IMG/VR virus record: IMGVR_UViG_3300043411_001777
Span: 124,001-188,000 of that record
Reading direction: 5' to 3' (one strand)
Length of the DNA stretch: 64,000 bases
The stretch's first letter is position 1, and each line of letters starts with the position of its first letter. The position numbers and the translations under genes were made by a program. Below the pieces are notes generated by a model. The model had not been told where the DNA came from, searched no databases, and saw nothing but the letters and a program-made list of their open reading frames with translations. Positions 5,401-56,161 of the stretch are shown one piece after another.

Positions 5401-5949
5401 CGTATCTGCTATATCAGATAGGACTTCCACACTCTCGCCCGTAGAAATCAGAGTCGGGTTGATCCGATACCAGCCTACAGACCCGCCTGCGGGTGCCGTG
5501 GTTGCGTAAACGTTGTAGCCCATTACGTTCGAATCTTCCAACCCAGAGATAACTACTTTCACAGTACGATCTTGACGCTCAACCCAAACACCAGTCGGGG
5601 GGGATGCTACGGACCCAAACTCATTCTCCGTAGATAGGATAGCCGTGGCTTTGCCCACCGAAGTGGACCCACCACTCGACAAAATACTCTTCACCTCAAT
5701 GACATTGTCCCCGAAAAACAGTTGCAGACCATTTGGGTAAGCCGCAGGATTTGGGACTGTAAACGAGGTCCCCTCAAACACAATAAGGTCCGGATCAGAG
5801 GAAAAGTCCCCGCCGTTGATAGCAATCTGCATATCAATGGTATCAGCATCCACAACGCCAGAGAAAAACCGGAACGATGACGTAGTGGAGAAGATGAAAT
5901 CTGACCGAAGAACATTATCCGGCCCGTAGAATTGCGGGGCAGTTGCCAT
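2443..5949 (-). CDS. Baseplate J-like (gp6-like) wedge protein with N-terminal FN3-like region
   Basis: 1168 aa. Baseplate_J-type motifs: GSVTRD..IDP, R..G..SRGEVT, QAASSGVSGDVAPGVI, VTN..RTFGG..RETNRELATRA, GGKVDVWVRG. It sits between the gp25-like and gpI-like genes. Confidence 0.85.
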   Translation of the reverse strand: MATAPQFYGPDNVLRSDFIFSTTSSFRFFSGVVDADTIDMQIAINGGDFSSDPDLIVFEGTSFTVPNPAAYPNGLQLFFGDNVIEVKSILSSGGSTSVGKATAILSTENEFGSVASPPTGVWVERQDRTVKVVISGLEDSNVMGYNVYATTAPAGGSVGWYRINPTLISTGESVEVLSDIADTEIDSDITVDENDVRLADPLYFNLLGTQTDADGVVVQTDFNEGFSISELVTRLRTSITVQAVSVETQFSFVHDRQGTLTSTNPTVPNPLFSTIAPTEPVFYAVTAIYLISDIEVESAFSPEVSGTPLLLTPQVGSLPVVSTTQIDGQIVEAIHRSQPLIAVHAGSVTRDTKIDPFVLEASRIRFILEFVHAASNFATLLAIDDPSGTGTSIPVNQSSYKQQLKAAFYLRSDAEVQALIDNSFDALAARTASSRESGKASRGEVTIYVTSRPSTSLSFFIGQEVSGGGQRFRLTSNAQINASGAGSNYNPVTGRWSTRAFIQAASSGVSGDVAPGVIRTITGAPAGVQVTNESRTFGGKGRETNRELATRAGNAIASVDVGTAQGIVRTAAAIGGVRQVNVIEAGHPLMLRDYLPEHDLHTGGKVDVWVRGGVEASVTDAFAFSFSLVKGMQFETFGDPSDLRFRAIDPNLSEENPIIEMLDFGDFGFQMRNESKDYAFDLTNVEVTSYNMIQLDGTLNDPADLDLEDLIRGSYRYRRSNKYIFTRQPVSSIVSFTGSRTGTVSSDLYSLFHTESPFQLGRSSEANDYIQVVQDPDGNISIPSSEPIVVEDEAHVILDGIEYVNNLGANPLSLRVFSNDRTVEYISPFVLSGTPDYTLVSGDETTPIGIQLTSDSEIVEGQSLLFDYEHDENFVVTYRTNALISAVQQDLDNNRHGSADVLAKAAIPVPVSLVLVVVLANSAYRQKSATQMKGAIRAEVSRLFDGLSQGEPLYPSDVVDVVKGLSGVSYLVLPFTKMTKSDGAVVSQEPLLVEQDSDYVHITSWSTSTTDVFFLVQELEASTTNGGGPEYEFRGVTQNKTVLTHFDTPPNANGVPFKYRAGAEYIIGASGMVVPGVTDESTLQAAYPFATATERADKREELSRNRVLLVLPKGEVPTDYEYHCYYVVDGDSGVKSIVPSPIEYLTLGDLEIVMDEEPDFAARIRGRA

Positions 5950-7076
5950 TAGAGCACTCCCAAGGATTGACCATTAGTCCCCGCCTGAGCAGTGACGCCT
6001 GGGACCGTGAAGACCACGGGGATATTGATAGGTTCGGCCGATGCGTTTTGCACCGTTATGTCAATTAGGAACACCGTCGGATCTTTCTCGTGCTGCATTA
6101 CATTAACACTCAATATCGAGTATAGCCGTTCTCGCGGTGAAACTTGTTGGACAACAGCCTGTTGCCTTTGAACGTTCTGCACCAGAGAAAGCGCGCGACG
6201 TACATCCTCAGATAAGAGGGCCGCAGTTCCGGCTAAAACCTTGGTTCCAACGACGGATTTTACGATTGACCCGTACTGACGGTGAAAGAAATTGCTTCCG
6301 CGCTCTGTAAGCAGCATCTTGAGCACGATTTGTTGCAGCAAGGACTCATTCTCAATGAGAATGTCTTGGCCAGAAGCATCATACCTGAAGTCATTCTCGA
6401 CATTCGTTCCGCCGCATCTGAGACACCGGTCTCTTGACGTAGCATAGCTAATCTTGAGTAACGGGTTGCTTAAGACGGGCTCTCTAAACCGCGGATACTT
6501 ATCCGTGATCGTTATGTCCCGTATCTGTCGGGAATATGCCAAGATATCCCATGCTGGCAAAATCTTCTGCCCACGCGCTCCGTAGCATCGACCATTTGAT
6601 GAGCTACCGAAACCCAACGCGGCAACGGCGGAACCAGATACCTTAACAAAGGATTCCGGTCCTACTTGAGAGGTGTCCGAAATGCTCAAATGCCCATTGA
6701 CATTTTCAGCTAGGAATGTCCCGCGCCCCCGCAGCTCACGCAAAACTTGTTCCGTTGTAAGACGCGTCCGGCTCGCTACGGGCAGGCTGATACCCCAACT
6801 CCCCTGAGAGGTCTCAACCGTCAAGTCTTTGGTCAACGGCGTTAAATCAAAGGGCCCCCCGACTGAAGCGAACAGTTGGGCCACAGAGAATAACCCCGAT
6901 TGGGGGATGGCAATATCATTAGCTGTGAGCCTGACTGTATTGCTACTAGCAATGCTCTGGGCAGTCTGCAAAGTCCTACGGTCTGAAGGGAGCGTCAAAC
7001 GCTCTTCGTAGGTTAAGTGGGGGCAGTTCCAGCCTAAGGCAAAATCACGTGACATTATTGCAGGGTCCTCTCCCAT
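5949..7076 (-). CDS. Baseplate wedge gp25/GPW-like protein with N-terminal extension
   Basis: 375 aa; the alternative ATG at 7055 (MSRDF) has a GGAG upstream. The C-terminal IENESLLQQIVLKMLLTERGSNFFHRQYGS...L..I..V.V....P....I.I.V pattern is gp25-like. It lies upstream of the J-like gene. Confidence 0.8.
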   Translation of the reverse strand: MGEDPAIMSRDFALGWNCPHLTYEERLTLPSDRRTLQTAQSIASSNTVRLTANDIAIPQSGLFSVAQLFASVGGPFDLTPLTKDLTVETSQGSWGISLPVASRTRLTTEQVLRELRGRGTFLAENVNGHLSISDTSQVGPESFVKVSGSAVAALGFGSSSNGRCYGARGQKILPAWDILAYSRQIRDITITDKYPRFREPVLSNPLLKISYATSRDRCLRCGGTNVENDFRYDASGQDILIENESLLQQIVLKMLLTERGSNFFHRQYGSIVKSVVGTKVLAGTAALLSEDVRRALSLVQNVQRQQAVVQQVSPRERLYSILSVNVMQHEKDPTVFLIDITVQNASAEPINIPVVFTVPGVTAQAGTNGQSLGVL

Positions 7077-7138
7077 ATCTAACGATAGACGGAGAACCGC
7101 CCAATAATCACACGATACCAGAACCCTAAAGAGGTGTA

Positions 7139-7765
7139 ATGCATGTGAGAGCTGCCATTATACAGCTTTGTATACTGTTCCTAGGCGCCTGCACCTATCA
7201 CACAACACCGCCTCCCTCACCAACTCTCCTACCCGTACCGATTATCCAGCAATATGGGCATGTTACAAATTGTGGCCCAACTTCCGCAGCAATGCTGCTT
7301 ATTGCGTACAACTCGGCACTGGATATGGGCAGCACCCAAACTCTAATTGGGGACTGGACTTGGGAAAAATTCCCAAGCCGTAAAGTGGCCTGGGCAGGTC
7401 AAGTGGGCCTAACTTCTGCCAAAATGCTTCAAGCTGCGTTAGCTGAATTCGGCTTCCTTACGACTCATGCGGAGTTTCCACCATACTTCCCCGCCATATT
7501 AGCTTGGACCCATTTGAAAATCGCAATCGGATCCCACAAACCGGTGCTGGCTCTTGTCGACGCGACGATTTTATGGGGACACCAAGCCAGAGGGCTCCAC
7601 TGGATCGTAGTAGTAGGCATTTTAAACGACACCGTTTGGTTCAATGACCCGGCCTATGGGACGCGATCCCAACTTCCCAAGCAAACGTTTCTAGAGGCCT
7701 GGCGTCTCCCTCCAGAATACAAAGGCTATGAAGCCCTCGTCCCAGAAAACCCTTTACCCCCCTAA
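7139..7765 (+). CDS. Putative lipoprotein carrying a C39-like (papain-fold) cysteine peptidase domain
   Basis: 208 aa with an AGAGGT Shine-Dalgarno. It has a hydrophobic N-terminus ending in the lipobox-like FLGA-C, then a Pro-rich linker. LPVPIIQQ...NCGPTSAAM supplies the oxyanion Gln and catalytic Cys, GLHWIVVVG the His, and WFNDPAYG the Asp. Confidence 0.8.
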   Translation: MHVRAAIIQLCILFLGACTYHTTPPPSPTLLPVPIIQQYGHVTNCGPTSAAMLLIAYNSALDMGSTQTLIGDWTWEKFPSRKVAWAGQVGLTSAKMLQAALAEFGFLTTHAEFPPYFPAILAWTHLKIAIGSHKPVLALVDATILWGHQARGLHWIVVVGILNDTVWFNDPAYGTRSQLPKQTFLEAWRLPPEYKGYEALVPENPLPP

Positions 7766-8638
7766 TGGGTCTCGAATCTCAGAAGGCATGTCTGGAAACA
7801 CAAAGTACAGAAGTCCGGACTGCACCGGAGCTGAGTACGCCCGGACCCCGTCCTCCCCAGTCTCGAAAATCAACTCATTCATATCGTGAATGAGTGACTG
7901 CACCAACTGGCCTCTATTGTAGAGGTCCGGATTGAAATCTGGGAACCCCGTCAAGGATCCAGAAAACGCCTGGTAGAGGGTTTCCTCCTTCTCGATAGTG
8001 AGCTGTTCCCTCAGGTCACATTGTTTGATGATACGCCACTCTATATCGGTCACGCGCTCCTTAATTGCTTGGCCAGCCCAAGCACGGATTTGGTGCATGG
8101 TTCGGACAACAGTCTCACTATCCCAAGCCGCCCGTGACAACTTCCCACCCATACGAGCCGGGTAATACCGATCGGACTTTACCCACCCACCCTGATAAGG
8201 CCCATACCCCGTCTCTCCAGGCTCTCCTACAGGGGAGTTAGGAGCCACTGACGAAGGAGCCAGCACACCACCGTGGGGGTATTCCTGGCTGAAAATTGGG
8301 AGCCCTGAGGGGTCCAGCTCCACAACACTGTGGGTGTCTGGATACCGAAAGGGCGAAATATCGTATGGGTTGCCCCCCTGTGCTATATATGCCTGTAACA
8401 GCTTACACAACACCGTATCTTGCCCAACGGAAAAGCCAGTCCGCTCTTCGGTCCGTGTGAGCACACCAGCACTGTCCCTGACTCCACGATAGTACACCCG
8501 CAAAAACCCAATCCGAGCGATCTCCACTTCCAGAATGCGGACGTGTGAGACAAGATCACGCCGATTGTTCAACAGCCAACGGGAAACCGCACGGAAATAG
8601 CCCGCGGGAAAATGCGATAGTTTGGAGAAACTCGACAT
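7754..8638 (-). CDS. Hypothetical protein, probably baseplate-associated
   Basis: 294-aa ORF translationally coupled (TAATG) to the upstream 984-aa gene. No family recognised. Confidence 0.6.
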   Translation of the reverse strand: MSSFSKLSHFPAGYFRAVSRWLLNNRRDLVSHVRILEVEIARIGFLRVYYRGVRDSAGVLTRTEERTGFSVGQDTVLCKLLQAYIAQGGNPYDISPFRYPDTHSVVELDPSGLPIFSQEYPHGGVLAPSSVAPNSPVGEPGETGYGPYQGGWVKSDRYYPARMGGKLSRAAWDSETVVRTMHQIRAWAGQAIKERVTDIEWRIIKQCDLREQLTIEKEETLYQAFSGSLTGFPDFNPDLYNRGQLVQSLIHDMNELIFETGEDGVRAYSAPVQSGLLYFVFPDMPSEIRDPLGG

Positions 8639-11592: not shown

Positions 11593-11713
11593 TTGTCCCC
11601 AGCTTTGCCTTCTCGGCGGCTTCCCAGGTAAGCATTAGAGCTTTCATTTTCGCCAGAATAGCCTTAAGCTGTTCTGCCTCATAGGTGCCTGAAATGGGTT
11701 GCCACTTACTCAT
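11576..11713 (-). CDS. Small helical protein, 45 aa (missed by the ORF track)
   Basis: MSKWQPISGTYEAEQLKAILAKMKALMLTWEAAEKAKLGTNGRPS. The ATG overlaps the end of the 3690-aa gene, with GAGG just upstream, and the stop overlaps the start of the 984-aa gene. It exactly fills the gap between them. Confidence 0.65.
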   Translation of the reverse strand: MSKWQPISGTYEAEQLKAILAKMKALMLTWEAAEKAKLGTNGRPS

Positions 11714-14700
11714 TTAGCCTCGTTACCGTACGCCTAAGCATGGAAAATTGTGAGCCCTTTGCCCGTTTACTCGTAAGGGCTGCCCTGAATTGACGGATTG
11801 CCGCTAGGGTCCCCGTCGTCTTATGGGTCCGATACCCAAGCCACATAAGCCGTAGGGCACGGAACTTTTCCGAAGTGTCTAGCACTTCAGAGATCCTGTC
11901 TGGAAAGAGAGGGCGCACAATATCCCCGTCCTCAGAAGAGAATGAGGTATAGGGCCCCCCATCAGTCTTAAAGGCCGGGTCCACTCCAGAGTCATACGTT
12001 CGCGCAGTGAAATCCGTATTCGGCACCAGACGGTCCAACCTGGCATCCTGAATCCAAAAACGTCGATCCAAAATTGACAAAGCATCCGAACTGTTCGCGA
12101 AAGGGCTCACCCCAAACTCACCCATCAGATTACGGATTACTCCATTAGTTAGGAGTCCCCGGGCGACTTCTAGGTCCTCCAAATCCCCCAGAGAAGCGAT
12201 GTGAGTATCGTCCTGGAAATCGAAGTAAGAACCACCTTTCACTCCCCGCATAAGTGCCCCGAACTTATCAATCAGAGATAGGGTGCGCTCCCTCATCAGG
12301 AGGATGAGATCCACGGTCTCCGGCTCAAACAGAGAAAGTGGCCGGATGATCCGATAAGAAAAGGGTCGGATCGAATAGGCGTCTTCACTATAGGTTAGAA
12401 CATTCTTCACCTTAGTCGGACGCAAGTCGTTCTGCCCCTCTCTGTTATCCAAAGGAGCTGGGGACACGTAATCAGTGTGGTTTAGGAGGGAGTCATTTAC
12501 CGTAGGGTAAGCAACATAGCCCAGGGCTGCTTGCTCGGTCGCAGGAAATACTTGATCAGAGTCAATATCCCCGCTAAACGTAGTCACTGGGTCTACAACG
12601 AGGTGGTCACCAGCAACTTCCAAGACTCGATAGAACCCACGATTGTCGTCCAAATTAGAAGGTGACCCTGCCACGTAGCCAGCTCGTGTAGAGACTCGGG
12701 TGTCTCCAAATGCACGCGAGCCTCGATCTATAGAATTGGGGATTGCCCCGATTGGGTCCACGATAACGATATCCCCAACGGCAACCCCTAGAGTCTCGTA
12801 AGTCGTCCCCCCAACCACGGATTTATCATCGTATAGATGATTGGCTACGTCAGACCACGAATCGCCAGGAGTGAATTCCGGCACGTAACCGCCTTCCTCA
12901 GTATCCCAATCTGCAATTGTACGATGGACCTCTTTCGCCGTAATGAGGTTGAGTAACTGCTCGTTGGTTTGTTCGTGAGGAACAGGGGCCTGGCGCAGCC
13001 AAATCTCAAACCGATACCCTCCGTTTGAAGCGTGCCCACTAGGAATAACACTTTGAGGGGGCCGCAACAATAGCCGACCATCACTGATAACAGCCGCAAT
13101 CTCATGCTGCTCGATCAGATCCCCCTCCTCGTCCAAAATACGGAACCAATCACCTGCATGGATATTGACATTACTGTCTAGGAAGCCGCCAAGGTTAGTC
13201 CCCGTATACACTTGGAGATCATTCCACACATCACCGGCCCAAGGCGCCACCACATCGTTGTTGAAGTCCATCGTAAAAGACTCCGCCCGTACAGTAGCGA
13301 ACCCTTTATCGTCCTCAGACCAATCTGTAATGCGCCCGCGTCGAATTTCATAGGCGAACCGAAGAGCTTCAAAACTTGAGCTAACCTCGATTTGAGCCTC
13401 ATGCCAACGCCTACACCGACGAATCTCGAAATCAACTTCCTCCGGAAGCCCCGTGATATCGTCCTGATTTGCAGCGTAGAATAGCTCCTTATTCCGCACC
13501 CCAACATCAGCATCATCCATGTTGTTGTTGTCATCAACCACATGGGCATAATTTGTTCCCATGTTCAGTACGGGAAGGGGGAAAGAGGGCTCCAAAAAGA
13601 TGCCCGCCTGTGCATAAAAACCGGGGGTGGCCCCATCCGCCAAGATGAGCTGAGCCCCAGGCAAAAGGCAATGGGTCTTTAGATCGTTGGCAGCAATACC
13701 ATTGCCATAGGACCCGACCGGCACATTAAGCGACTTCCACTGGGCAGTCGTTAATTGGTCCAGAGAAAGGCATTTAGGAACTGACGGATATACCGCCTTT
13801 TCCAATGAATCCACAAAAGTAGCTAGTCCGCCTGAAATACCCCAAACCGTTCCTTCTGTAACCGTTAGATGGCCCGAGGCCGCATCCGCAGGCTTGTGGA
13901 CTTTCGCCCCACCGCCACTTTGCTGTCCATCGAAGAGCAACGCGACGCCAGACACCGACACTGGGGGCGCCAATTCCAAGAAGCGAATCCCGTACACGGA
14001 ATGATGGTTTGTCAATGTCGTCGACAAATCCGCCCCTACACCCGCACCCGATATGCTGGCGAGAGTCGGCGCCGCCGTATACCCTGTTCCGGGATGCGTG
14101 ATTGTCACGCTCGTTATATCTCCCAACCCGCCAACCGTAGCCACTATTGCCTTAGCTGTGACTCCAGCAACGGGGGCTGTAAACGTAATGACATCCCCGA
14201 TGGAATACCCCGTTCCTGGAACATCAATAGCAATTGAGACCACCGATCCAGGCTCATCGTAACCAACGACATTGTTAGACGGAAGCTCCCCTCCCTTTAC
14301 GTCTATCGGTAGGTGGCTCATCCCAGTCACATACCGACCAGCGATCGCCAAAGCAGCAAACTCGTCCGCTGTCATTGCCGTGTTATCAGCCCACCGATAC
14401 ACACCCGTCCCCAAGAACTTGTAGGCGATGGCGCTCATGCTTGTGTATTCGCAAGAGATTACGGACACACGGAAATCCGCAGCATCACTAGCATTCAAAG
14501 CAGCCGGGTCTAGGACAATGAACAAACGTCCGCTTGACTCAAAACCACTCTTGAGCCCACCGATTGAAACCGGAGAGTCCTCAAACCCTGCATAGTCACT
14601 GACCGTCAGCTCAGAGCTGCCCGAGTCAAACTCCACAATCGTGGGGAATTGAACGGGACACCAACCGCCGGAGCTATTTGCCCATGCCGTGTGTGAGCTT

Positions 14701-17700
14701 TCTCGGTATGGGTTTCCGCCCGTTGGGGTGACCGCATGCCGGACGAGATAGGTGCCGGTTTTCGTGCTGGCGATGTGGTCCCCGTATATTGGACTCGTTT
14801 TACCCAGCACACATAGGTCCCCAGGCTCGATATTGGCAAGGGCCCCATCAGCTACAACGATATCCGCCAAACGGGTGTCATAGAGGAACACTCCCACCTG
14901 AGTATGGGCCGCCGACTCTACATAGCCAACACCTCGGCAGATATAGTCCCCATCTACTTGTGACGTGGAAGGTATTGCCGAACAGATAATGTCGGCAGAC
15001 ACGATAGACGTATTCGGGTTCGTCTCAAGCGCCATAACCTTGATCGACCCCACCTCAGAATCTGCGCCCCGAGCCACCCACTGACCCCCCACATCCGACC
15101 GCAGGTAATAGGAGGCAGCATCCGTCGCAACTGTTGAGCGCGGCACGAACGTAAGAGCCGCAGACACCACGTCATTGATCGTGGAAGCCGTTCCGTCCCG
15201 CAGAGTAACCTCTCGAATCCGGAGCCCGCCCGCGAGGGAAACACCGGACAGCGGGTGAGTATACCCACGAGCCTTAACGTGACGCATATCCCAAACATCA
15301 CTGAACGTCAACCGATCTTCCCCAACCCAACCCGTATTGCTTCCGCCTCGATCGGCAGTCGAATTAAACGTGTCGATAGATAGGGAGAACTCATACCCAT
15401 ACAGACCCGTTTTACGTGCTCCCGCCACCGCATGGGGAATGAACCACTGATTTGGCGTGCCTCCGCCCCAATCGATAATCGCAGAGTCCTTTAGGTGGAT
15501 TTGACGATTTTCGATCACAGTTCCCGCTGGGGTTTCCTCCGTACCGAAAGTAATCCCAAAGCCGGTTAGGGTCCCGCTACTGAAATTGCCCCAGTAATCT
15601 GTTACGGTCCAAGTAGTACCAAAGATTCGGATGGTGAGGAACACCTGCCCCGCAGAAGGCAGACCAGGATCAGGGGAGTCCGTAATAGAGGCGTCTGTCC
15701 GCCAGTACAGCCGGAACGTGAAGATATTCTTGGACTTGTACCCAGTGCTTGACCACAACTCATTCAGATTACCCAAGCCGATGGTGTCACCATCGTTGAG
15801 AGCCAGCTTTGTCAAGCTGGAGAAGTCTAGAATGGTTAGATCCGCGCCCGTATCTTCAATGATCTGTAATCCGGGTGGGATAGCAACCTGCGGGTCCAGG
15901 GCATAATTGCCGGGGTCATCCGTGTACACAATGGCATTGTCAAACGTGTAACGAATGACACTGCCCGTATCCGGATCAGCCAAATTCAAAGGAGGGGTGG
16001 TGGGGGTTACGAATCTTGGGGGTTCGTAAATCGATCCGTAACTCCCACCACCAAGCGACACAGTGCTTATCTCTCCAACGGATATAATACCCTGCCAACC
16101 AGCTTCCACTACTTTAGGCTGAACCAAAACAAGGTCAAATCGACCAACGTCTCCAATACCAGGGTCCGTTGCACCATGAGCAACAGGAGTGGCATCTACG
16201 GGAACGATGAGGGCCGCAGGCTCAGCATAACCAGAGCCCCAAACCTCATAGGCGCTCAGGATTTCCCCCTCAGTTGACAAGATTTCATCCGGATAGAGAT
16301 ATCCGCCAGAACCATCTTCTGCTTCGATCACCAACGGCGCTGCCACCGCAGCATCCCCCAAGCGTTCCAGCTCTGAATTCAGGACGGCGACAAAGGGGAT
16401 AGCCTGGTCCCCCGTATCATCTAGCTCCTCACCGCGCAGAGCGGGGATTTCAAGGGGCCCTAGCTCAGTATAGCTGAACCCTGCCACAGCTTCCAATGAC
16501 TGAAGCGGCCTTGGGGAATTCTGCCCCAGAATCTCCTTCAAACCTATGAAACTCGGATCGGCAAAAGAAGGGAGGGAGATATCTAGGACACGGCCATCCT
16601 TTGTGATCGCCAAATCTCGACCCACCACATACTGGTCATTTCGAGATACGGCAACTTCCAAGTCATCTGTTGTTATGGGGCTGCTCAAAGCGGTATTGGA
16701 ATTTAGGCTAGGAGCCGCGTAGATAGTTGCCCCGGGCTGAAACTCGAACTCTCCCAACGGGATCGCCTGATCCGGACCTTGCCCGATGAGCAAATTGTTC
16801 GGATCGGCTATCCGAACGCTATTGACATTTCGGAATGTCAATACACAACCGTATTCCACAGAGTCAACGAAAACACCCGTAAACGAAGACTGTCCGAAAA
16901 TGTCCACGGTCTCGGGAGAGAAGAGCAAATAGGTCTCCCCAGAAGGCAGGCCGAAACTTAGCTGGTCACCCACTTGAAATCCTGGAACCGATAGGTCAGG
17001 ATTGCCTGATTCCAGATCCGGGTCCTCTCCGCCCTGAGACAGGAGATCCGCATAGCTAGGGAACCCGGTCTCCGGATCGATCTTGAAATCACGAAGAAGT
17101 TGCGGCGTAGCGATAATTACAGGATCTGTAATCGCAAGCGGGAACGCCCCACCGGGGACTCCAGTAGGGAAATACCCCCAAACCCGAGCCCGAGCCCGGC
17201 GTTTGAAAACAACTGCATCCGATACGCCCGTAATCTCACCCAACACCGGATTTTCAAGCTGACCAATCTGCTTTCGATACGTGCTACGTCGCGAGCCCCC
17301 AAACAACGTCCCCCAGCTATAACGGCCCTCACCATCCAAGTCCGATCCAATGCCCGGATATGTGGTGAAAAAGGCCCGCGTTGTAGTCGGAAACAGCCGA
17401 GAAAGCCCATGCTGCTCGCCCATTTGAGCAACCAAGGACGCTGCCTGTTGCTTAAAGAACGGGAAGAACGCTGTCCGAATAGCAGTCACCTTGCCAGGTG
17501 AAACGAGCACGTAATCGTCTACGTCATTCTTAATGAGTAGAACTTGCTTGCCAATCAACTGGTCAATGCGGTCGGCTTCAGGCAAATCTCCGGCAAGCTC
17601 ACCCTGAGAGAGAGTTGCCGTACGGGGCTCCATTAACGGATCGGTCCTCAGCACCCACAGGGTGTCAGCGGCCTCCTGCATGGATACTTCAGCCCACAGG

Positions 17701-20700
17701 TATCTTGGAGTAATCTGGCCGGAGATATCGTCCTCATACCCAGGCACCGGGAGGGTCTTATCCTTCCCAACCCAAAACCTGAACTTGCCTGACCGATCGC
17801 CAATGACTCCAGAAGTCATTGTCTCCAAGGCCTGCTCAAACCCTTCGATGGTCTCATTGTAGAAAGACAGCATTACACGGGAGGCACGATCCTTGTCAAG
17901 TAGATCAGCCAACCGAGTAAGCAGCCCAGCACGGCCGAATTCCCAGTTGTTCATTGGAGTTGCCGGAACAACACTGCCAGTCTCGGAATTCAAGTCCTGA
18001 ATTGCTTGGGTCACCGTTTCAGAAACGAATCGAGTCAGCGGAGTCACCCGCACATAGAACGAATCCGGAGACCTGTAAAAGAACCGGCCTTGGAGCTGGC
18101 TATTCAGCACACCATTGGCAACAGAAGGGGCGTCCCGGTATTTGAAGCTAGCATAGATCCGTGGGAAAATCAGCGCCCCACGATCAACAAAGGGCTCCAG
18201 ATACCGCAACTTTGTGTAGTGCAGCAAAAGCTGCTCCCCACGAGTTACACCCGCCGCTAGTTGAATACCTTCAGGCGTGAAAGTGTAGTCAACTTGAGAC
18301 CTTAACTCCCGGCCTTCTGGGAAGGAAATAAGCCGGACATCCGTCCCAAATGTCTGGGCACCGACTGCAATGGCTGTATCCTGCTCATAATAGAGCGGTA
18401 AGTAGGAGCATTTGACAGGCTCCGTTCCAGCCAAATCAAGGCGGACCGGCGAGGACAAGGTCACAAAAGTCTTAGACCCGTCCTCTGCCAGAGCTGTTCT
18501 CCGCACAATGTACGGCTGCCCAGCAACTTCTAGGAGGTGGCCGGGTTTGGCGAAGGCCGACACATCCCCAACGAAAGCAAGTGTCACAGCTCCGCGGGAA
18601 ACAGCATTAAATGCAAAGGCTTGGGGGAAAGACTGCAACACACCAAAGTTTGCGGACGTTGCTGTGCCATCAACACTGGCCGTAAAGGCTATGTCAGATA
18701 GCCACATCCCTACATCATTTACAGGCGCACGACTACCAAGTTCACTTGCAGTTGCAGGGTAGAGGGTCACCGCCGTAATGTCCTCGGCCGCAAACAGCTC
18801 CACGGATTTAATGTAGTGGCAAACCTCTCCAATCTTTAGGATTTGACCCGGCGTAAACTCAGACGCGCGATCACCACGCACACCAAAGCGATTCTTTCCG
18901 GAAGGAATGTAGAAAGGAGGACGGTATATCGGATAGGCACCGCTTCGAAAAGTGACCTCCCCACCAAAAGCAACGGGAACAGAACTGATCGCCTTGACCT
19001 CAGCTTGCTCCGGGACCTCCCGGTAAAACTTGATATTGGACCCCTCCACATAGAAATCCCGAGCGCCGCCATAATTCAAACGACGACCCCCGAGAGTAAC
19101 AATTGGGTCCGCCCCTCCCAAGTACCCGTAAACTGTAGCTGAAACTCGCGTGGCTACTTCTGTGTGGGTGAAACTGACAATTTCCGTTATGGCATCTCCG
19201 ACCTTCCGGCCTTCCATATCCGCCTGGAAGTACGTCAACTCTAGGACCTGTTCCGCTTGGAGAGGCTCTCTCAAAGAACAAGCTCCCGTTTGGGCGGACA
19301 CCATCACATCGGCGCCCAAGAGCAACTGCTCTGCGAAATAGAGCTGCCCTTCTCCGGCCTGCACATTCAGCTCGCCAGAGAAGGGGTCAAATTCAGCAGC
19401 ACCGTCCAAATCTGCCAATTCCAGGAAGGTCTCCTCCAAGTAGACTTGGGAAGTACCGTAAGCATCCAACACACTTTGTGGGAAGCGCAGAGTGCCTTTA
19501 GTAAGGCCCTCTCCCAGAACCTCGACAACCACAGGTGTCGTGCTCCATGCACTTACGATAGAGGGCTCGAAATAGGTGTCCCCAACGCGGATTTGGAATT
19601 TACCCGTGGAGAGCCGAATGTCCGAAACGGACACCACCAAAGTGTCTTGAGACAAGACCCCAAGCTTTACCGTTCGCAGAGGGCTAAGAAGAATGTCAAG
19701 CCCTTCTATGCCGTACCGGAGAGAAACACCACGACCACGCTCGATTGCTTGTGCAACCGGGGCCGTCTCAGAAACCTGAGTAAGCTGCTTAACAATGAAA
19801 GTCTCGGAAGGAAGATGGCTAAAGGGCCGCAGCACACCCCGGACTAACAACGAAGGGTCGTATACATTTGGCGAGAACCCCTCATAGAGGGCCCAGCTCA
19901 ATTCCGTGCTATCCTCCAACGTAGGGGTTAAGGTGATACCCCCATCAACCGACGTAACCATGAACCAAGAGCCGTCGATCTTAAACAGACTGCCCTCAAC
20001 CACCACACTCAGATCGGCATTCGAATCAGTAAAGATTCCCGAAGACACCTGACCCGTCTGCCCCGAGGAAACGAAAGCCCCGAAAGTCTCGGTCAAGAGC
20101 ATCTGCCCAGTCTGACCCCCTTGGGGGAGGTTGAAGTCTTCCTCATAGGTAAGAGGCGTAAGTGCTCCGCCCTCTTCTGCCAGCGAGATATGTCCGAGCC
20201 CGTCTATGTTCCGGACAGTTGGAGTGACCACGGAGGACACCCCCAAATCAAAGGAAAAGGTCTTCTTCTCAACAAGAATCTCAGTTTCCTTAGAAGAGAG
20301 CCAAGCTAGCTTGCTTTCCCCAAACAGGTATTCCACTTCCTCGAAATTGGAAACTGGGGTGTCCAGTAAAACTGGCTCACCCTCCGCGTCCAACGTACTG
20401 TTTCGCAGGTAGAAGAATACGTCCGTATCCAACCCAGGCCGGTCCTCTAACGGGATTGCCGGTAGAAACTGAAACGGAGCACTAGAAACCTTGTCCTGAA
20501 TGACGCCATTGTATTTAGCGTGGGCCTTGAAATCCGAAACCTCAGCATCCAATTCTGTATTGCTGTGTGACCGATAAAACCCAAAGCTCACACCCGAATC
20601 AGGATTCCAGGCCCCAACTTCTGCGTACCAGCCCTGAGCGAAACCGAGGGCCCGATTTCCAGTGTGGTTGGGACTCACCCGAATCAACAGCGGGTTCACA

Positions 20701-22778
20701 TTAGAGTGCAGCACCACGCGCCCATTTTCCGCGGTAGCCGTGCCCCGAAGCGCGACGCTATAGCCGGTGCTTTGCGTAGCAATTTGCGCTTGGATACTTG
20801 CTGCAACTTCCTCAGCCGTATAAGTCCCGTCACTGCTAAACGCAGAAACCCAAGTAAACTCATACCCGCCTAGGGAAAAAGACAACTCCTCATCCCCCTC
20901 AAACCTAAAGACGTGCTGGACTCTAGAGTAGAGAGTGCTGTCACTCGCCCAGGTTGACGGAGTAAAAGTGCTTTGGAGAAAGTGTATGTCCTGACCATTG
21001 ATGTTCTTCAGGTCTGCATTTGAAAATCGGACTAGACTCCCACTAGCCCCAAGCTCTTTTGCCACATAAGCCTCCCCCTTCTTGATCTTGTGGCGGGGTG
21101 GGATATCAGCCTCAAAGTCCACAACATTGATCGTATGGATTGTGAAGTCCCTAGAAAAAATCAGAGTGTCCCCAACACCATCCTCAATTGCCCTCACAGC
21201 ACCAGAGGCGGCGGCAACTGCTGTATCTCCCCCAGGTCGCACGCCCACCAGTTCGTCCACAGGAGTCAGCCCCGTGCCATCAAACGCTGTCAACGTCCCA
21301 GAAACGCCCAACCCAGGAACAGGGCTCCCGGCCGGGATATAGTAATCCCCGGAATTCAAAACCAGTGCCTGTGCGGCCTTTAATGGCTGAGGAACCGCAT
21401 TGAGCGCAACTCCATCATAGAAGACTCTGGCATCCAAATACGACCGGACAAACCCACTTGAGGTTGGCAAAGCCTTATTCAGATCGGTCTGGCTGAACCG
21501 AATCCGACCCGTCTCAAGGGAGACCCCGACTTCCCCTACAGCCAAAGAAAGTAGAGGAAGCTCCGCATCGGTATCCGTCAACGTAGGGGTTAAGTACCGC
21601 CGGTTTCCAATCCGAAGAAAGGGGTTGTCATTTTTCTCAGGAATTGGAGAAAGGAAAAGTGGGTCCGTTGAAGCCGATTCAAGAGATCCTAAGTCCCCGG
21701 TATTCTCTGCCGAGACTGCCTGGTAAACCCAAACCGTCTCCCCAATGTGATCGGACACAAACTCCGGATTAAAGCGCAACACCCCATCCTGACTAAGGGT
21801 CGCGTCTACAGTATCCGAACTCCAATCATACCGAGGCGCCTGCCCCTCGGTAACAACTCGGACATCTGCCCGTGTGCTTTGAGCCAACTCAAAACCAACC
21901 CGGAGGTGGAGCGGAGAAAGAACCCCCACAGGGAAAATTCTCGGCTTAGGGCTCAAAGGAATTGAATCGAGACCGATAACACCCAAAGAAGTTGGGGGAG
22001 CGCCTTTCCATGGCTCCCACCTTTGGGACTTCGCGCGCCAACCAAACCTCGTCTCGTATTTGTCGTTACGAGTCCACCAAAAGGTGGGCTCTTGCCGCTC
22101 AAAGCGGACTGCCACAATGGAATCGCCCCGAAGGGCGGATAAACCACCGTCCAAAAGGGACAACTGAGCACTGGAAAGAGTGACCAATCCAGCATAAGTA
22201 TCTTGCGTGGCGACCTGAAAAACCAGATACGGAACAGTCCCCGCACGACCTGCCGAAGGGTCCTCTTCGTCTAACCAGCCCCCATCATCATAGATGACAT
22301 CACCGCGAGCCACTACGAGATATTCGATGTATTCCAGGGAGCGATTGTCATCATCGGACACCACCACTTGTGCCGTTCCGTCAGCATAGGTGCGGCCCTC
22401 TCCATCCACAACGGAGAGAGAACCCAATCCTAAGCTCCCAGACCCCGCCTCTGACCAAGAAGGGAAGTACGTCAGGCTAGCCTCATTAGCGGCCCAAACC
22501 AGATACTCGCTTTCAGAAGCCGAAGGGGCTTCCAAAACCATATCCCGATAGGCATGCCCATGCACGTCCTGCCAGGTAACTCCCGTAACGGCCGGGGACC
22601 CGTCTCCTTCCTGAACGAAATCGACAACATCTGCCAAATTACGCAACACCCCGGAAGAGGCCTCGGCTGTCGTCGAAGCATTTGAGGTTGCCTGCCGTGC
22701 ACCACAAATCACATGCCCAGAAAAGGGGTGCTTCTTGTCCGCAAATTCGGCGTCAGTAGGGTCGGGGTTGAAGCTCAT
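11706..22778 (-). CDS. Giant (3690 aa) virion structural protein, probably baseplate or fibre-associated
   Basis: Uninterrupted 11-kb ORF, beta-rich and acidic in composition, located between the spike and wedge genes. It contains recognisable inserted modules (see findings). Confidence 0.7.
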   Translation of the reverse strand: MSFNPDPTDAEFADKKHPFSGHVICGARQATSNASTTAEASSGVLRNLADVVDFVQEGDGSPAVTGVTWQDVHGHAYRDMVLEAPSASESEYLVWAANEASLTYFPSWSEAGSGSLGLGSLSVVDGEGRTYADGTAQVVVSDDDNRSLEYIEYLVVARGDVIYDDGGWLDEEDPSAGRAGTVPYLVFQVATQDTYAGLVTLSSAQLSLLDGGLSALRGDSIVAVRFERQEPTFWWTRNDKYETRFGWRAKSQRWEPWKGAPPTSLGVIGLDSIPLSPKPRIFPVGVLSPLHLRVGFELAQSTRADVRVVTEGQAPRYDWSSDTVDATLSQDGVLRFNPEFVSDHIGETVWVYQAVSAENTGDLGSLESASTDPLFLSPIPEKNDNPFLRIGNRRYLTPTLTDTDAELPLLSLAVGEVGVSLETGRIRFSQTDLNKALPTSSGFVRSYLDARVFYDGVALNAVPQPLKAAQALVLNSGDYYIPAGSPVPGLGVSGTLTAFDGTGLTPVDELVGVRPGGDTAVAAASGAVRAIEDGVGDTLIFSRDFTIHTINVVDFEADIPPRHKIKKGEAYVAKELGASGSLVRFSNADLKNINGQDIHFLQSTFTPSTWASDSTLYSRVQHVFRFEGDEELSFSLGGYEFTWVSAFSSDGTYTAEEVAASIQAQIATQSTGYSVALRGTATAENGRVVLHSNVNPLLIRVSPNHTGNRALGFAQGWYAEVGAWNPDSGVSFGFYRSHSNTELDAEVSDFKAHAKYNGVIQDKVSSAPFQFLPAIPLEDRPGLDTDVFFYLRNSTLDAEGEPVLLDTPVSNFEEVEYLFGESKLAWLSSKETEILVEKKTFSFDLGVSSVVTPTVRNIDGLGHISLAEEGGALTPLTYEEDFNLPQGGQTGQMLLTETFGAFVSSGQTGQVSSGIFTDSNADLSVVVEGSLFKIDGSWFMVTSVDGGITLTPTLEDSTELSWALYEGFSPNVYDPSLLVRGVLRPFSHLPSETFIVKQLTQVSETAPVAQAIERGRGVSLRYGIEGLDILLSPLRTVKLGVLSQDTLVVSVSDIRLSTGKFQIRVGDTYFEPSIVSAWSTTPVVVEVLGEGLTKGTLRFPQSVLDAYGTSQVYLEETFLELADLDGAAEFDPFSGELNVQAGEGQLYFAEQLLLGADVMVSAQTGACSLREPLQAEQVLELTYFQADMEGRKVGDAITEIVSFTHTEVATRVSATVYGYLGGADPIVTLGGRRLNYGGARDFYVEGSNIKFYREVPEQAEVKAISSVPVAFGGEVTFRSGAYPIYRPPFYIPSGKNRFGVRGDRASEFTPGQILKIGEVCHYIKSVELFAAEDITAVTLYPATASELGSRAPVNDVGMWLSDIAFTASVDGTATSANFGVLQSFPQAFAFNAVSRGAVTLAFVGDVSAFAKPGHLLEVAGQPYIVRRTALAEDGSKTFVTLSSPVRLDLAGTEPVKCSYLPLYYEQDTAIAVGAQTFGTDVRLISFPEGRELRSQVDYTFTPEGIQLAAGVTRGEQLLLHYTKLRYLEPFVDRGALIFPRIYASFKYRDAPSVANGVLNSQLQGRFFYRSPDSFYVRVTPLTRFVSETVTQAIQDLNSETGSVVPATPMNNWEFGRAGLLTRLADLLDKDRASRVMLSFYNETIEGFEQALETMTSGVIGDRSGKFRFWVGKDKTLPVPGYEDDISGQITPRYLWAEVSMQEAADTLWVLRTDPLMEPRTATLSQGELAGDLPEADRIDQLIGKQVLLIKNDVDDYVLVSPGKVTAIRTAFFPFFKQQAASLVAQMGEQHGLSRLFPTTTRAFFTTYPGIGSDLDGEGRYSWGTLFGGSRRSTYRKQIGQLENPVLGEITGVSDAVVFKRRARARVWGYFPTGVPGGAFPLAITDPVIIATPQLLRDFKIDPETGFPSYADLLSQGGEDPDLESGNPDLSVPGFQVGDQLSFGLPSGETYLLFSPETVDIFGQSSFTGVFVDSVEYGCVLTFRNVNSVRIADPNNLLIGQGPDQAIPLGEFEFQPGATIYAAPSLNSNTALSSPITTDDLEVAVSRNDQYVVGRDLAITKDGRVLDISLPSFADPSFIGLKEILGQNSPRPLQSLEAVAGFSYTELGPLEIPALRGEELDDTGDQAIPFVAVLNSELERLGDAAVAAPLVIEAEDGSGGYLYPDEILSTEGEILSAYEVWGSGYAEPAALIVPVDATPVAHGATDPGIGDVGRFDLVLVQPKVVEAGWQGIISVGEISTVSLGGGSYGSIYEPPRFVTPTTPPLNLADPDTGSVIRYTFDNAIVYTDDPGNYALDPQVAIPPGLQIIEDTGADLTILDFSSLTKLALNDGDTIGLGNLNELWSSTGYKSKNIFTFRLYWRTDASITDSPDPGLPSAGQVFLTIRIFGTTWTVTDYWGNFSSGTLTGFGITFGTEETPAGTVIENRQIHLKDSAIIDWGGGTPNQWFIPHAVAGARKTGLYGYEFSLSIDTFNSTADRGGSNTGWVGEDRLTFSDVWDMRHVKARGYTHPLSGVSLAGGLRIREVTLRDGTASTINDVVSAALTFVPRSTVATDAASYYLRSDVGGQWVARGADSEVGSIKVMALETNPNTSIVSADIICSAIPSTSQVDGDYICRGVGYVESAAHTQVGVFLYDTRLADIVVADGALANIEPGDLCVLGKTSPIYGDHIASTKTGTYLVRHAVTPTGGNPYRESSHTAWANSSGGWCPVQFPTIVEFDSGSSELTVSDYAGFEDSPVSIGGLKSGFESSGRLFIVLDPAALNASDAADFRVSVISCEYTSMSAIAYKFLGTGVYRWADNTAMTADEFAALAIAGRYVTGMSHLPIDVKGGELPSNNVVGYDEPGSVVSIAIDVPGTGYSIGDVITFTAPVAGVTAKAIVATVGGLGDITSVTITHPGTGYTAAPTLASISGAGVGADLSTTLTNHHSVYGIRFLELAPPVSVSGVALLFDGQQSGGGAKVHKPADAASGHLTVTEGTVWGISGGLATFVDSLEKAVYPSVPKCLSLDQLTTAQWKSLNVPVGSYGNGIAANDLKTHCLLPGAQLILADGATPGFYAQAGIFLEPSFPLPVLNMGTNYAHVVDDNNNMDDADVGVRNKELFYAANQDDITGLPEEVDFEIRRCRRWHEAQIEVSSSFEALRFAYEIRRGRITDWSEDDKGFATVRAESFTMDFNNDVVAPWAGDVWNDLQVYTGTNLGGFLDSNVNIHAGDWFRILDEEGDLIEQHEIAAVISDGRLLLRPPQSVIPSGHASNGGYRFEIWLRQAPVPHEQTNEQLLNLITAKEVHRTIADWDTEEGGYVPEFTPGDSWSDVANHLYDDKSVVGGTTYETLGVAVGDIVIVDPIGAIPNSIDRGSRAFGDTRVSTRAGYVAGSPSNLDDNRGFYRVLEVAGDHLVVDPVTTFSGDIDSDQVFPATEQAALGYVAYPTVNDSLLNHTDYVSPAPLDNREGQNDLRPTKVKNVLTYSEDAYSIRPFSYRIIRPLSLFEPETVDLILLMRERTLSLIDKFGALMRGVKGGSYFDFQDDTHIASLGDLEDLEVARGLLTNGVIRNLMGEFGVSPFANSSDALSILDRRFWIQDARLDRLVPNTDFTARTYDSGVDPAFKTDGGPYTSFSSEDGDIVRPLFPDRISEVLDTSEKFRALRLMWLGYRTHKTTGTLAAIRQFRAALTSKRAKGSQFSMLRRTVTRLNE

Positions 22779-51834: not shown

Positions 51835-51860
51835 CCTGAGGGCGGAATAACCACATTACC

Positions 51861-53515: not shown

Positions 53516-53549
53516 TGTAACCTCTTATCTGAGGCCAATTATCGGCATT

Positions 53550-56159: not shown

Positions 56160-56161
56160 CG

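What the first reader, a model, noticed from the sequence alone, without database searches (positions are those of the whole stretch)
7139..7765. Lone antisense lipoprotein-peptidase gene inside the baseplate operon
This is the only credible plus-strand gene in 64 kb. It is divergent from the gp25-like gene and overlaps the 294-aa gene tail-to-tail by 12 bp (7754-7765). It encodes a lipobox-like signal (FLGA-C), a Pro-rich spacer and an intact Cys-His-Asp C39-like peptidase. A membrane-anchored extracytoplasmic protease expressed independently of late genes would suit superinfection exclusion (cleaving receptors, pili, S-layer or incoming phage proteins) or envelope remodelling (inference). 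Its transcription would also run antisense to the upstream baseplate genes.
Basis: partly seen in the sequence, partly recalled or inferred. Interest (0 to 1): 0.6.

Follow-up and report, generated by a model that had tools for sequence, protein, structure and literature searches.

The report
Captured exported peptidase in huge phage
A giant uncultured phage carries, backwards inside its baseplate gene block, an intact gene for an exported (probably lipid-anchored) cysteine peptidase whose only close relatives are in Myxococcota bacteria and one other phage-like contig; it is a well-supported accessory gene of unknown substrate, interesting but not extraordinary.

Summary
ORF 7139-7765 (+), 208 aa, is a real gene. 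It is the only non-shadow plus-strand gene in about 94 kb of minus-strand genes. It lies 62 bp from the gp25-like gene, divergently, and overlaps the 294-aa gene tail-to-tail by 12 bp.

It scores above Pfam's cut-off for Peptidase_C39_2. A confident AF2 model has a C39-like papain fold. Q38, C45, H154 and D170 are conserved across 24 homologues. An N-terminal signal with a lipobox-like LGA|C18 and a Pro-rich linker precede the domain.

New findings:
- All 14 matches in species-representative genomes are Myxococcota MAGs. There the gene is single-copy in the four genomes checked, usually beside a three-gene bactofilin cluster, and usually carries an ordinary signal peptide.
- Eight related huge phages share the surrounding synteny and none has this gene. 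Two carry a GIY-YIG homing endonuclease at the same junction, so the site takes insertions.
- The phage also has a stand-alone Amidase_2 and a tail-borne Amidase_2, so this is probably not the main endolysin.

No RNA data exist. Superinfection exclusion remains an untested guess. My best reading is an accessory envelope peptidase shared with Myxococcota, probably captured from that lineage.

The parts
7139..7765 (+). CDS of the 208-aa exported C39-like cysteine peptidase (stop codon included)
   Evidence: PF13529 scores 32.3 bits (cut-off 24). 25 homologue clusters below 1e-10.
7131..7135 (+). Shine-Dalgarno-like GAGGT, 3 nt before ATG 7139 and 9 nt before in-frame GTG 7145
   Evidence: A 5-mer SD occurs before 33 of 207 phage ORFs against 4.4% of random 20-mers. 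There is none before Met52.
7077..7138 (.). 62-bp divergent spacer between the gp25-like gene and the peptidase gene; any promoter for the peptidase gene would lie here or inside the gp25-like gene
   Evidence: No plus-strand sigma-70-like site was found. No shared upstream motif was found.
7139..7189 (+). Signal peptide, residues 1-17 (one Arg in the n-region, then a hydrophobic core)
   Evidence: Kyte-Doolittle 9-residue mean up to 2.97; helix 2-17; 36 of 37 family sequences have such a hydrophobic segment before the catalytic domain.
7181..7192 (+). Lipobox-like L15-G16-A17-C18; Cys18 is the putative lipidated first residue of the mature protein
   Evidence: fits the PS51257-like pattern but not the G+LPP pattern; a lipobox-like motif is rare in the family (clear in P0022, possible in P0024).
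7193..7240 (+). Pro-rich linker, residues 19-34 (6 Pro), modelled as coil
7232..7654 (+). Peptidase_C39_2 domain as matched by Pfam (residues 32-172); the modelled fold continues to about residue 204
7250..7252 (+). Gln38, putative oxyanion-hole residue
   Evidence: conserved in at least 90%; aligns with the Gln before the catalytic Cys in 3erv and 6mpz.
7271..7273 (+). Cys45, putative nucleophile, in the invariant C-G-P motif (preceding Asn in at least 90%)
7598..7600 (+). His154, putative general base
7646..7648 (+). Asp170, third member of the putative triad, 16 residues after the His
7754..7765 (.). 12-bp convergent overlap of the peptidase gene with the 294-aa gene
   Evidence: 100%-identical contigs from two other studies span it (7675-7900 and 7748-7948).
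7754..8638 (-). 294-aa conserved structural-block gene (g294), upstream neighbour in the minus-strand operon
   Evidence: 41-49% identical homologues in 7 IMG/VR phage contigs. No Pfam or PHROG match.
5949..7076 (-). gp25-like (sheath-initiator / baseplate) gene, downstream neighbour in the minus-strand operon

Best explanation
This is an accessory ('moron'-type) gene of a huge phage. Shown: the window lies in a 206-kb fragment that CheckV rates 39% complete, and its closest sequenced relative is a 485-kb uncultured phage. The gene sits in a junction of the baseplate block (g294 | gp25-like) that is empty in most relatives and that takes insertions. Its only close relatives are a rare family found in Myxococcota genomes and one other phage-like contig. 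Inferred: the gene was captured from that bacterial lineage. Inferred from sequence: the protein is exported by Sec and probably lipid-modified at Cys18. It would then hang from a membrane on a Pro-rich tether, with a catalytically competent clan-CA, C39-like (PF13529) domain in the periplasm, using Q38/C45/H154/D170. Because it keeps every invariant residue of the cellular family, it most likely cuts the same envelope substrate as the bacterial enzyme. My preferred guess for that substrate is a peptidoglycan or other envelope peptide. Two hints point that way: the cellular gene's fixed place beside bactofilin genes, and the endolysin peptidase domains that are its nearest viral structural neighbours. 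Its opposite orientation implies its own transcription, uncoupled from the late baseplate operon. The phage would thereby add a tethered copy of a host envelope peptidase to the infected cell, for envelope remodelling. Whether the benefit is exclusion of other phages or help with release is not resolved.
For: Real gene and family. Fold: AF2 pLDDT 89.4, pTM 0.82. VIA Z 16.6 to 3erv, 16.4 to the LahT double-glycine protease, 16.1 to the PeiR endoisopeptidase. Foldseek agrees. Catalytic residues align with the Q, C, H and D of 3erv and 6mpz in a profile search. Export: hydrophobic N-terminus and lipobox-like pattern; 36 of 37 family sequences have a hydrophobic N-terminal segment before the catalytic domain. 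Link to Myxococcota: all 14 matches in species-representative genomes are Myxococcota or 'Deltaproteobacteria' MAGs. There is one copy in each of four genomes checked. Only 7 of 301 sampled Myxococcota genomes have it. The phage protein falls inside the family, separated from the outgroup by a branch with SH-aLRT 100. Most chromosomal loci with enough flank share abhydrolase - hypothetical - 3 bactofilins - peptidase synteny. Accessory status: 7 IMG/VR relatives and LR745208.1 share the flanking synteny and none has the gene. In 5 of them g294 and gp25-like lie about 50-90 bp apart. In 2, a GIY-YIG/NUMOD3 endonuclease sits at the same junction. The assembly is sound: 99-100% identical contigs from wastewater and sediment studies cover the gene interior and the 3' junction. 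Not the main endolysin: a stand-alone 226-aa Amidase_2 and an Amidase_2 domain in the 1704-aa structural protein exist. A second phage-like contig (L006, 6 of 10 proteins with PHROG matches) carries a family member.
Against: There is no expression evidence: no RNA run holds the sequence. No promoter-like site was found on the plus strand in the spacer, and no terminator after the gene. The lipobox has Gly at position -2, fails the stricter pattern and is absent from most homologues, so ordinary signal-peptidase cleavage after A17 is possible. SignalP and LipoP could not be run. The substrate is unknown, and bactofilin synteny may be inherited gene order with no functional link. Gene GC (0.515; GC3 0.50) matches the phage and not most Myxococcota homologues (GC 0.65-0.75). 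So any transfer was old, or came from a low-GC member such as the 53%-GC contigs L007/L008. The direction of transfer is inferred from breadth and synteny only; the tree is unresolved inside the family and only the quick tree finished. The Foldseek and VIA matches (TM about 0.5-0.6, top Z values tied) do not separate protein-cutting from peptidoglycan-cutting relatives.
Confidence: 0.5

Rival explanations
1. Enzymatic superinfection exclusion. The tethered peptidase, made early, would cleave a surface receptor, pilus, secretin or incoming phage protein, so that later phages cannot infect the cell.
For: The gene is a lone antisense gene in the tail/baseplate block. That resembles the placement of the T5 lipoprotein Llp next to the receptor-binding protein gene; Llp is made early and blocks FhuA from the periplasmic side (PMC9586334). 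The protein has a lipobox-like signal. It is accessory and absent in 8 relatives, as exclusion genes usually are.
Against: There is no homology to any known exclusion or defence protein (PHROGs, PADLOC). Known exclusion lipoproteins (Llp, Cor) are small binders, not enzymes. Early timing is assumed, not shown. The cellular orthologues look like ordinary chromosomal genes rather than defence genes.
Confidence: 0.18
2. Secreted auxiliary lysin. A Sec-exported peptidoglycan endopeptidase would accumulate in the periplasm and help lysis, alongside the amidase.
For: The nearest viral structural neighbours are endolysin or Lysin A peptidase domains: the Gordonia phage OneUp endolysin (TM 0.58-0.60), cyanophage 'lysozymes' and mycobacteriophage Lysin A. 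Peptidase_C39_2 is counted among the enzymatic domains of phage lysins (PMC8223927). PeiR, a cell-wall endoisopeptidase, scores Z 16.1.
Against: That survey found the domain only in lysins of phages of Gram-positive hosts. The gene sits in the baseplate block and not beside any recognisable lysis gene. The record already has a stand-alone Amidase_2 and a tail-borne one. No wall-binding domain is present. The structural scores are tied with protein-cutting C39 domains. Eight related phages do without it.
Confidence: 0.17
3. Silent passenger. The gene was dropped into a recombination hot spot, perhaps during homing-endonuclease-driven repair, and is not expressed or gives no benefit.
For: The same junction holds GIY-YIG/NUMOD3 endonuclease genes in two relatives. 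No promoter or terminator was found. Codon fit to the phage is 1.8 sd below the mean.
Against: The 208-codon frame is intact and keeps all 10 invariant family residues despite a long terminal branch (1.08 changes per site). Its composition matches the phage. It has a strong Shine-Dalgarno box. Near-identical copies occur in three studies. All this argues for purifying selection while in the phage.
Confidence: 0.08
4. The true product is the 157-aa protein from Met52, as in the public gene call: a cytoplasmic fragment without signal peptide or catalytic Cys.
For: That is the call stored in the protein collections.
Against: Residues 26-51 align with all homologues and include Q38 and the invariant C45-G46-P47. 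The Pfam match starts at residue 32. There is a Shine-Dalgarno box before Met1/Val3 and none before Met52.
Confidence: 0.03

Closest known systems
Myxococcota chromosomal C39-like peptidase family (unnamed; e.g. P0007 in GCA_041690335.1 and GCA_041687695.1, P0003, P0006, P0022)
   Same: 35-44% identity over the whole catalytic domain. The same invariant residues (C45, G46, P47, W73, G90, W146, H154, V157, D170, W188). An N-terminal export signal. Similar size.
   Different: The cellular genes lie at a fixed locus, usually next to three bactofilin genes, and mostly carry ordinary signal peptides with longer linkers. The phage copy is shorter, has a lipobox-like motif, phage-like GC and no such neighbours.
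Pfam PF13529 Peptidase_C39_2 / PDB 3erv (putative C39-like peptidase, Bacillus anthracis)
   Same: Score above the gathering cut-off. Best structural match: Z 16.6, 163 residues aligned. Q, C, H and D align in the profile search.
   Different: Only 15-19% identity. 3erv itself has no known substrate, so the match gives fold and chemistry but not function.
C39 bacteriocin-processing peptidase domains of ABC transporters (ComA, PCAT1, LahT; PF03412)
   Same: The same fold (Z 15.8-16.4, rmsd about 2 A over 133 residues). The His and Asp lie 16 residues apart here; from memory, the spacing in ComA is about the same.
   Different: PF03412 scores 19.9 bits, below its cut-off of 22. Those domains are cytoplasmic and fused to a transporter. 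This protein is free-standing and exported.
FapD, periplasmic C39-like peptidase of the Pseudomonas Fap amyloid system
   Same: A free-standing C39-like peptidase acting on secreted envelope proteins. Its catalytic Cys is needed for FapC secretion (PMC6173800). It is a precedent for a protein-processing role in the periplasm.
   Different: There is no FapF-type partner or amyloid gene near the phage gene or its Myxococcota orthologues.
Phage T5 Llp and T1-type Cor superinfection-exclusion lipoproteins
   Same: A phage-encoded lipoprotein gene placed in the tail / receptor-binding region and expressed apart from late genes (PMC9586334).
   Different: Llp and Cor are small non-enzymatic receptor binders. 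There is no homology, and this protein carries a full peptidase domain.
C39_2-type peptidase domains of phage endolysins (Gordonia phage OneUp endolysin, mycobacteriophage Lysin A)
   Same: The best structural matches among viral proteins. The domain family is listed as a lysin catalytic domain.
   Different: About 14% identity. Those are cytoplasmic lysins of phages of Gram-positive or mycolate hosts, with no signal peptide or lipobox, and they sit in lysis cassettes.

Membership tests
Pfam PF13529 Peptidase_C39_2 (clan CA) | Whole-protein HMM score at or above the gathering cut-off | tested here: met
   32.3 bits against 24; E 1.7e-7; residues 32-172 on profile positions 2-143 of 143.
Pfam PF13529 Peptidase_C39_2 (clan CA) | Catalytic Cys and His (plus Asp and oxyanion Gln) present and aligned | tested here: met
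   C45, H154 and D170 are invariant and Q38 is in at least 90% of 25 sequences. They align with the corresponding residues of 3erv and 6mpz.
Pfam PF13529 Peptidase_C39_2 (clan CA) | Papain-like alpha+beta fold | tested here: met
   On a predicted model only: pLDDT 89.4; Z 16.6, 16.4 and 16.0 to 3erv, LahT and PCAT1; Foldseek probability 1.00.
MEROPS C39 / PF03412 bacteriocin-processing peptidase | HMM score at or above the cut-off | tested here: not met
   19.9 bits against 22.
MEROPS C39 / PF03412 bacteriocin-processing peptidase | N-terminal domain of an ABC exporter, acting on double-glycine leaders | tested here: not met
   It is a free-standing 208-aa protein with its own signal peptide. 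No ABC transporter gene adjoins it. Substrate specificity cannot be tested here.
Bacterial lipoprotein (signal peptidase II substrate) | n-region with K/R, hydrophobic core, then lipobox [LVI][ASTVI][GAS]C ending in Cys | tested here: inconclusive
   It fits a PROSITE-PS51257-like pattern (written from memory), ending in LGA|C18. It has Gly at -2 and fails the G+LPP pattern. LipoP and SignalP are not available. Most homologues have no lipobox.
Bacterial lipoprotein (signal peptidase II substrate) | Lipid modification and globomycin-sensitive processing | not testable with these tools
   Needs an experiment.
Phage moron / accessory gene | Absent from the same locus in related phages | tested here: met
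   Eight relatives with conserved flanking synteny lack it.
Phage moron / accessory gene | Own promoter and terminator, expressed independently | tested here: inconclusive
   The opposite strand implies separate transcription. No consensus promoter or terminator was found and no RNA data exist.
Superinfection-exclusion lipoproteins (Llp / Cor type) | Homology to a known exclusion protein | tested here: not met
   No PHROG, PADLOC or NCBIfam match.
Superinfection-exclusion lipoproteins (Llp / Cor type) | Early expression and block of reinfection | not testable with these tools
   No RNA run. The host is uncultured.
Phage endolysin | Sits in a lysis cassette, or is the only wall hydrolase of the phage | tested here: not met
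   It lies in the baseplate block. Amidase_2 occurs twice elsewhere in the record. The record is only 39% complete.
Phage endolysin | Peptidoglycan-cleaving activity | not testable with these tools
   There is only structural resemblance to lysin peptidase domains.

The most novel reading that the evidence does not exclude
A huge phage has taken a periplasmic cysteine peptidase from its Myxococcota-type host, given it a lipid anchor, and expresses it from its own promoter as an enzymatic superinfection-exclusion or receptor-shaving factor. That would be an exclusion lipoprotein that works by catalysis and not by binding. It would also tie this clade of roughly 0.5-Mb phages to an uncultured Myxococcota lineage.
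Probability: 0.15. Interest if true: 0.7.

Novelty: new member of a known kind. Interest (0 to 1): 0.42.

Why it matters
The finding gives four practical results.
1. It gives a host lead for a clade of huge phages. Relatives include a 485-kb uncultured phage. All close genomic relatives of the gene lie in a narrow, uncultured Myxococcota lineage.
2. It corrects a public gene call that cuts off the signal peptide and the catalytic cysteine.
3. It marks the g294 | gp25-like junction as a recurrent insertion site, shared with GIY-YIG homing endonucleases. Such a site is a natural place to look for accessory cargo in this clade.
4. It defines a small, uncharacterised family of exported C39-like peptidases that sits next to bactofilin genes in Myxococcota. 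The cellular role of that family is itself worth testing.

If the phage protein proved to be an enzymatic exclusion factor, that would be a new mechanism class. As it stands, it is a well-documented accessory gene of unknown substrate.

Tried and rejected
- Word-index protein search: only the record's own truncated call was found.
- INPHARED tblastn with the peptidase: no match.
- IMG/VR pattern scans with the protein and with the family alignment: no relative.
- PHROGs, NCBIfam and PADLOC: no match for the peptidase.
- IMG/VR scan with the gp25-like protein: no pattern match. The 294-aa protein worked instead.
- Single-sequence PDB search: only a weak hit, E 0.09.
- Promoter and terminator consensus scan: nothing on the plus strand near the gene. 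The minus-strand terminator-like (7394-7372) and promoter-like (7268-7241) sites inside the gene are within chance expectation.
- Search for shared upstream k-mers among 112 upstream regions of the phage: no motif, and nothing shared with the 62-bp spacer beyond a weakly enriched hexamer.
- Flanking direct or inverted repeats that would mark an insertion: only short, chance-level repeats.
- Alignment of the g294 | gp25-like spacers of relatives with the window's spacer: no convincing conservation.
- Integrase (PF00589), Phage_lysozyme, SLT and M23 in the record: none, but the record is only 39% complete.
- RNA evidence: no RNA run holds the stretch.
- Tree: the careful tree did not finish in time; only the quick tree is reported, and the phage's position inside the family is unresolved.
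- L006 shares nothing with this phage except the peptidase gene.
- One mis-specified genome search was corrected.

Full report
**Setting.** The window is bases 124,001-188,000 of a 206,089-bp linear IMG/VR virus record that CheckV rates 39% complete, so the full genome may be near 0.5 Mb. The record has 53% GC. It encodes very large proteins (3690, 1874, 1704 and 1271 aa), and most of them match nothing in Pfam. The Baseplate_J-like protein next to the finding is 38% identical over 99% of its length to a 485-kb uncultured phage, LR745208.1. This is therefore a member of a clade of huge phages.

**The observation.**
- ORF 7139..7765 (+) encodes 208 aa.
- A greedy ORF map of the whole record shows an unbroken run of minus-strand genes from record position 97,271 to 191,683. 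This gene is the single exception.
- The other plus-strand ORFs of 110 aa or more in the window all lie inside longer minus-strand ORFs.
- The gene lies 62 bp from the start of the 375-aa gp25-like gene, divergently. That neighbour has a weak Sheath_initiator match and PHROG baseplate matches.
- Its last 12 bases overlap the end of the 294-aa gene.
- Contigs from two other studies (wastewater and sediment metagenomes) are 100% identical over 7327-7534, 7675-7900 and 7748-7948. The gene and its convergent junction are therefore not an assembly artefact, and the phage occurs in several habitats.

**Is it a gene, and where does it start?**
- Pfam Peptidase_C39_2 scores 32.3 bits against a cut-off of 24, over residues 32-172.
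- An exhaustive phmmer search of 1.84 billion representatives found 50 proteins at E of 0.001 or less. Of these, 25 are below 1e-10, at 35-44% identity.
- The public call for this record starts at Met52 (157 aa). That start cannot be right. Residues 26-51 align with every homologue and hold Q38 and the invariant C45-G46-P47.
- A GAGGT Shine-Dalgarno box lies just upstream of ATG 7139. Nothing comparable precedes Met52.
- The box is only 3 nt from ATG 7139 but 9 nt from the in-frame GTG 7145. The real start may therefore be two codons later, which does not change the mature protein.
- Codon fit to the phage is 1.8 sd below the mean of similar-sized genes, but clearly better than any antisense frame.

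**Anatomy of the protein.**
- The N-terminus has one Arg, a strongly hydrophobic core and the sequence LGA followed by Cys18. This fits a PS51257-like lipobox pattern that I wrote from memory, but not the stricter G+LPP pattern.
- Six prolines lie in residues 19-34. The AF2 model shows helix 2-17, then coil to residue 41, then a compact domain (pLDDT 89.4, pTM 0.82).
- In a 25-sequence alignment, C45, G46, P47, W73, G90, W146, H154, V157, D170 and W188 are invariant. Q38 and N44 are nearly so.
- A profile of that alignment matches 3erv, the LahT double-glycine protease, a CdiA-CT papain-like toxin and ComA. The Q, C, H and D residues are in register.
- Structure searches agree on a C39-like papain fold. 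VIA gives Z 16.6 (3erv), 16.4 (LahT), 16.4 (Alr0975), 16.1 (the PeiR pseudomurein endoisopeptidase) and 16.0 (PCAT1). Foldseek gives the same set.
- These scores are tied. They establish fold and chemistry but not substrate.
- True C39 (PF03412) is below its cut-off at 19.9 against 22 bits. The protein is not fused to a transporter, so it is C39-like and not a C39 bacteriocin processor.

**Where the family lives.**
- All 14 matches in one-genome-per-species contigs are MAGs labelled Myxococcota, Myxococcales or Deltaproteobacteria.
- Four such genomes (5.3-9.3 Mb) each have one copy. Only 7 of 301 sampled genomes of that phylum have it. It is a narrow lineage trait.
- In the chromosomal loci the gene sits in conserved order: sigma-54 response regulator, FHA protein, alpha/beta hydrolase, a hypothetical gene, sometimes a phosphoribosyltransferase, three bactofilin genes, sometimes a GMC oxidoreductase, then the peptidase gene on the other strand.
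- The bactofilin triplet lies within about 2.5 kb in 15 distinct chromosomal loci in which I could look. It is missing in L012 and in the L007/L008 locus.
- Of 37 family sequences examined, 36 have a hydrophobic N-terminal segment, so the family is exported. Only the phage protein and P0022 have a clear lipobox-like motif at the end of that segment, with P0024 a possible third.
- A quick maximum-likelihood tree separates the family from more distant C39_2 proteins with SH-aLRT 100. It places the phage protein inside the family on a long branch (1.08), with no resolved sister.
- One further member (P0012, 42% identical) lies on a 30-kb contig of small genes. Six of ten of its proteins tested match PHROG families. 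It shares nothing else with this phage.
- The phage gene has phage-like composition (GC 0.515) and most cellular homologues have GC 0.65-0.75. However, the chromosomal contigs carrying P0022 have 53% GC. A donor or host of similar GC is therefore conceivable.
- Direction of transfer (bacterium to phage) is inferred from breadth, single-copy status and synteny on the cellular side. The tree does not prove it.

**The locus in related phages.**
- The 294-aa neighbour has 41-49% identical homologues in seven IMG/VR contigs. All seven keep the order g984, g294, gp25-like, J-like, g429, as far as each contig reaches.
- In five of them g294 and gp25-like are about 50-90 bp apart.
- In L027 and L028 the gap holds a co-oriented gene of about 240-250 aa with GIY-YIG and NUMOD3 domains, that is, a free-standing homing endonuclease.
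- In LR745208.1 the gap is about 300 bp and holds no ORF of 80 aa or more.
- None of the eight has the peptidase. The junction is therefore a variable insertion site, and the peptidase gene is cargo specific to this phage.
- No flanking repeats mark the insertion. The spacers do not align convincingly.

**What it does.** Three things are shown, or nearly so:
- The gene is intact, conserved and accessory.
- The protein is an exported clan-CA peptidase with all catalytic residues.
- The gene lies on the strand opposite the structural operon, so it needs its own transcription.

Three things are inferred:
- It is lipid-anchored.
- It acts on the same envelope substrate as the Myxococcota enzyme, because all family-specific invariant residues are kept.
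- That substrate is a peptidoglycan or other envelope peptide.

The hints for the last point are indirect. From general knowledge, bactofilins in several bacteria position cell-wall enzymes, and the cellular gene sits beside bactofilin genes. The best viral structural neighbours are endolysin or Lysin A peptidase domains. Peptidase_C39_2 is listed among lysin catalytic domains, although only for phages of Gram-positive hosts in that survey (PMC8223927). A protein-processing role like that of the periplasmic C39-like FapD (PMC6173800) is a serious alternative.

The phage already has a stand-alone 226-aa Amidase_2, a plausible endolysin, and an Amidase_2 domain inside the 1704-aa structural protein, a plausible tail lysin. 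The peptidase is therefore unlikely to be the main lysis enzyme.

It has no direct support here: no homology and no timing data.

**What could not be settled.**
- No RNA run holds the sequence.
- No plus-strand promoter or terminator was found.
- No shared upstream motif exists among the phage's intergenic regions.
- SignalP and LipoP are not available.
- The host is uncultured.

**Verdict.** The object is a new member of known kinds, both as a PF13529 peptidase and as a phage accessory gene. Three features give it moderate interest: its exclusive genomic kinship with an uncultured Myxococcota lineage, its lipobox, and its place in an insertion hot spot shared with homing endonucleases.

Noticed in passing
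L027:3876-4595 (+) and L028:6861-7619 (+): In two related phages the same g294 | gp25-like junction holds a free-standing GIY-YIG + NUMOD3 homing endonuclease gene, co-oriented with the operon. The junction is a recurrent insertion site.
   Followed up: yes
L002, L004, L009-L011, L013, L015-L023 (Myxococcota loci): The cellular orthologue sits in a conserved block: sigma-54 regulator, FHA protein, alpha/beta hydrolase, hypothetical, three bactofilins, sometimes a GMC oxidoreductase, then the peptidase on the other strand. It is often followed by giant proteins with only faint Cu-binding_MopE (PF11617) hits. A functional link between the exported peptidase and bactofilins is untested.
   Followed up: partly
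window 7139-7765; public call = residues 52-208 (P0001): The stored gene call for this record starts at Met52. It omits the signal peptide and the catalytic Cys45, so automatic annotation would miss both export and activity.
   Followed up: yes
window 30008-30355 (-), inside the 1704-aa ORF 25754-30868: An Amidase_2 (N-acetylmuramoyl-L-alanine amidase) domain is embedded in a giant structural-block protein. It is a candidate virion-borne wall hydrolase.
   Followed up: no
G000:C1:92066-92746 (+), outside the window (L024:1432-2109): A stand-alone 226-aa Amidase_2 protein is the most plausible endolysin in the record.
   Followed up: partly
window 11706-22778 (-), 38886-44510 (-), 25754-30868 (-): ORFs of 3690, 1874 and 1704 aa lie in the structural block. 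Neighbouring smaller ORFs in the block have no Pfam match; the giant ORFs themselves were not scanned.
   Followed up: no
window 48019-56210 (-): A nucleotide-metabolism and replication cluster is co-oriented with the structural genes. It holds a 1271-aa UvrD-like helicase, a MazG-like protein, a YspA/SLOG-domain protein and a long (447-aa) ThyX. A VWA-domain protein lies at 56642-58972.
   Followed up: no
L033 = LR745208.1:256842-274204: A 485-kb uncultured phage genome is the closest sequenced relative (J-like protein 38% identical over 99%). It has a gap of about 300 bp with no ORF of 80 aa or more at the same junction.
   Followed up: partly
L006:10001-10603 (+): A second, unrelated phage-like contig (53% GC, many small ORFs, PHROG matches) carries a 200-aa member of the same peptidase family with an ordinary signal peptide. 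Phages may have picked up this family more than once.
   Followed up: partly
window 7394-7362 (-) and 7268-7241 (-): A terminator-like hairpin with a T-run and a promoter-like site lie on the minus strand inside the peptidase gene. They could split the baseplate operon's transcript, but they are within the number expected by chance.
   Followed up: no
L026-L032: Relatives that share the baseplate synteny range from 43% to 62% GC. The clade may therefore infect quite different hosts.
   Followed up: no
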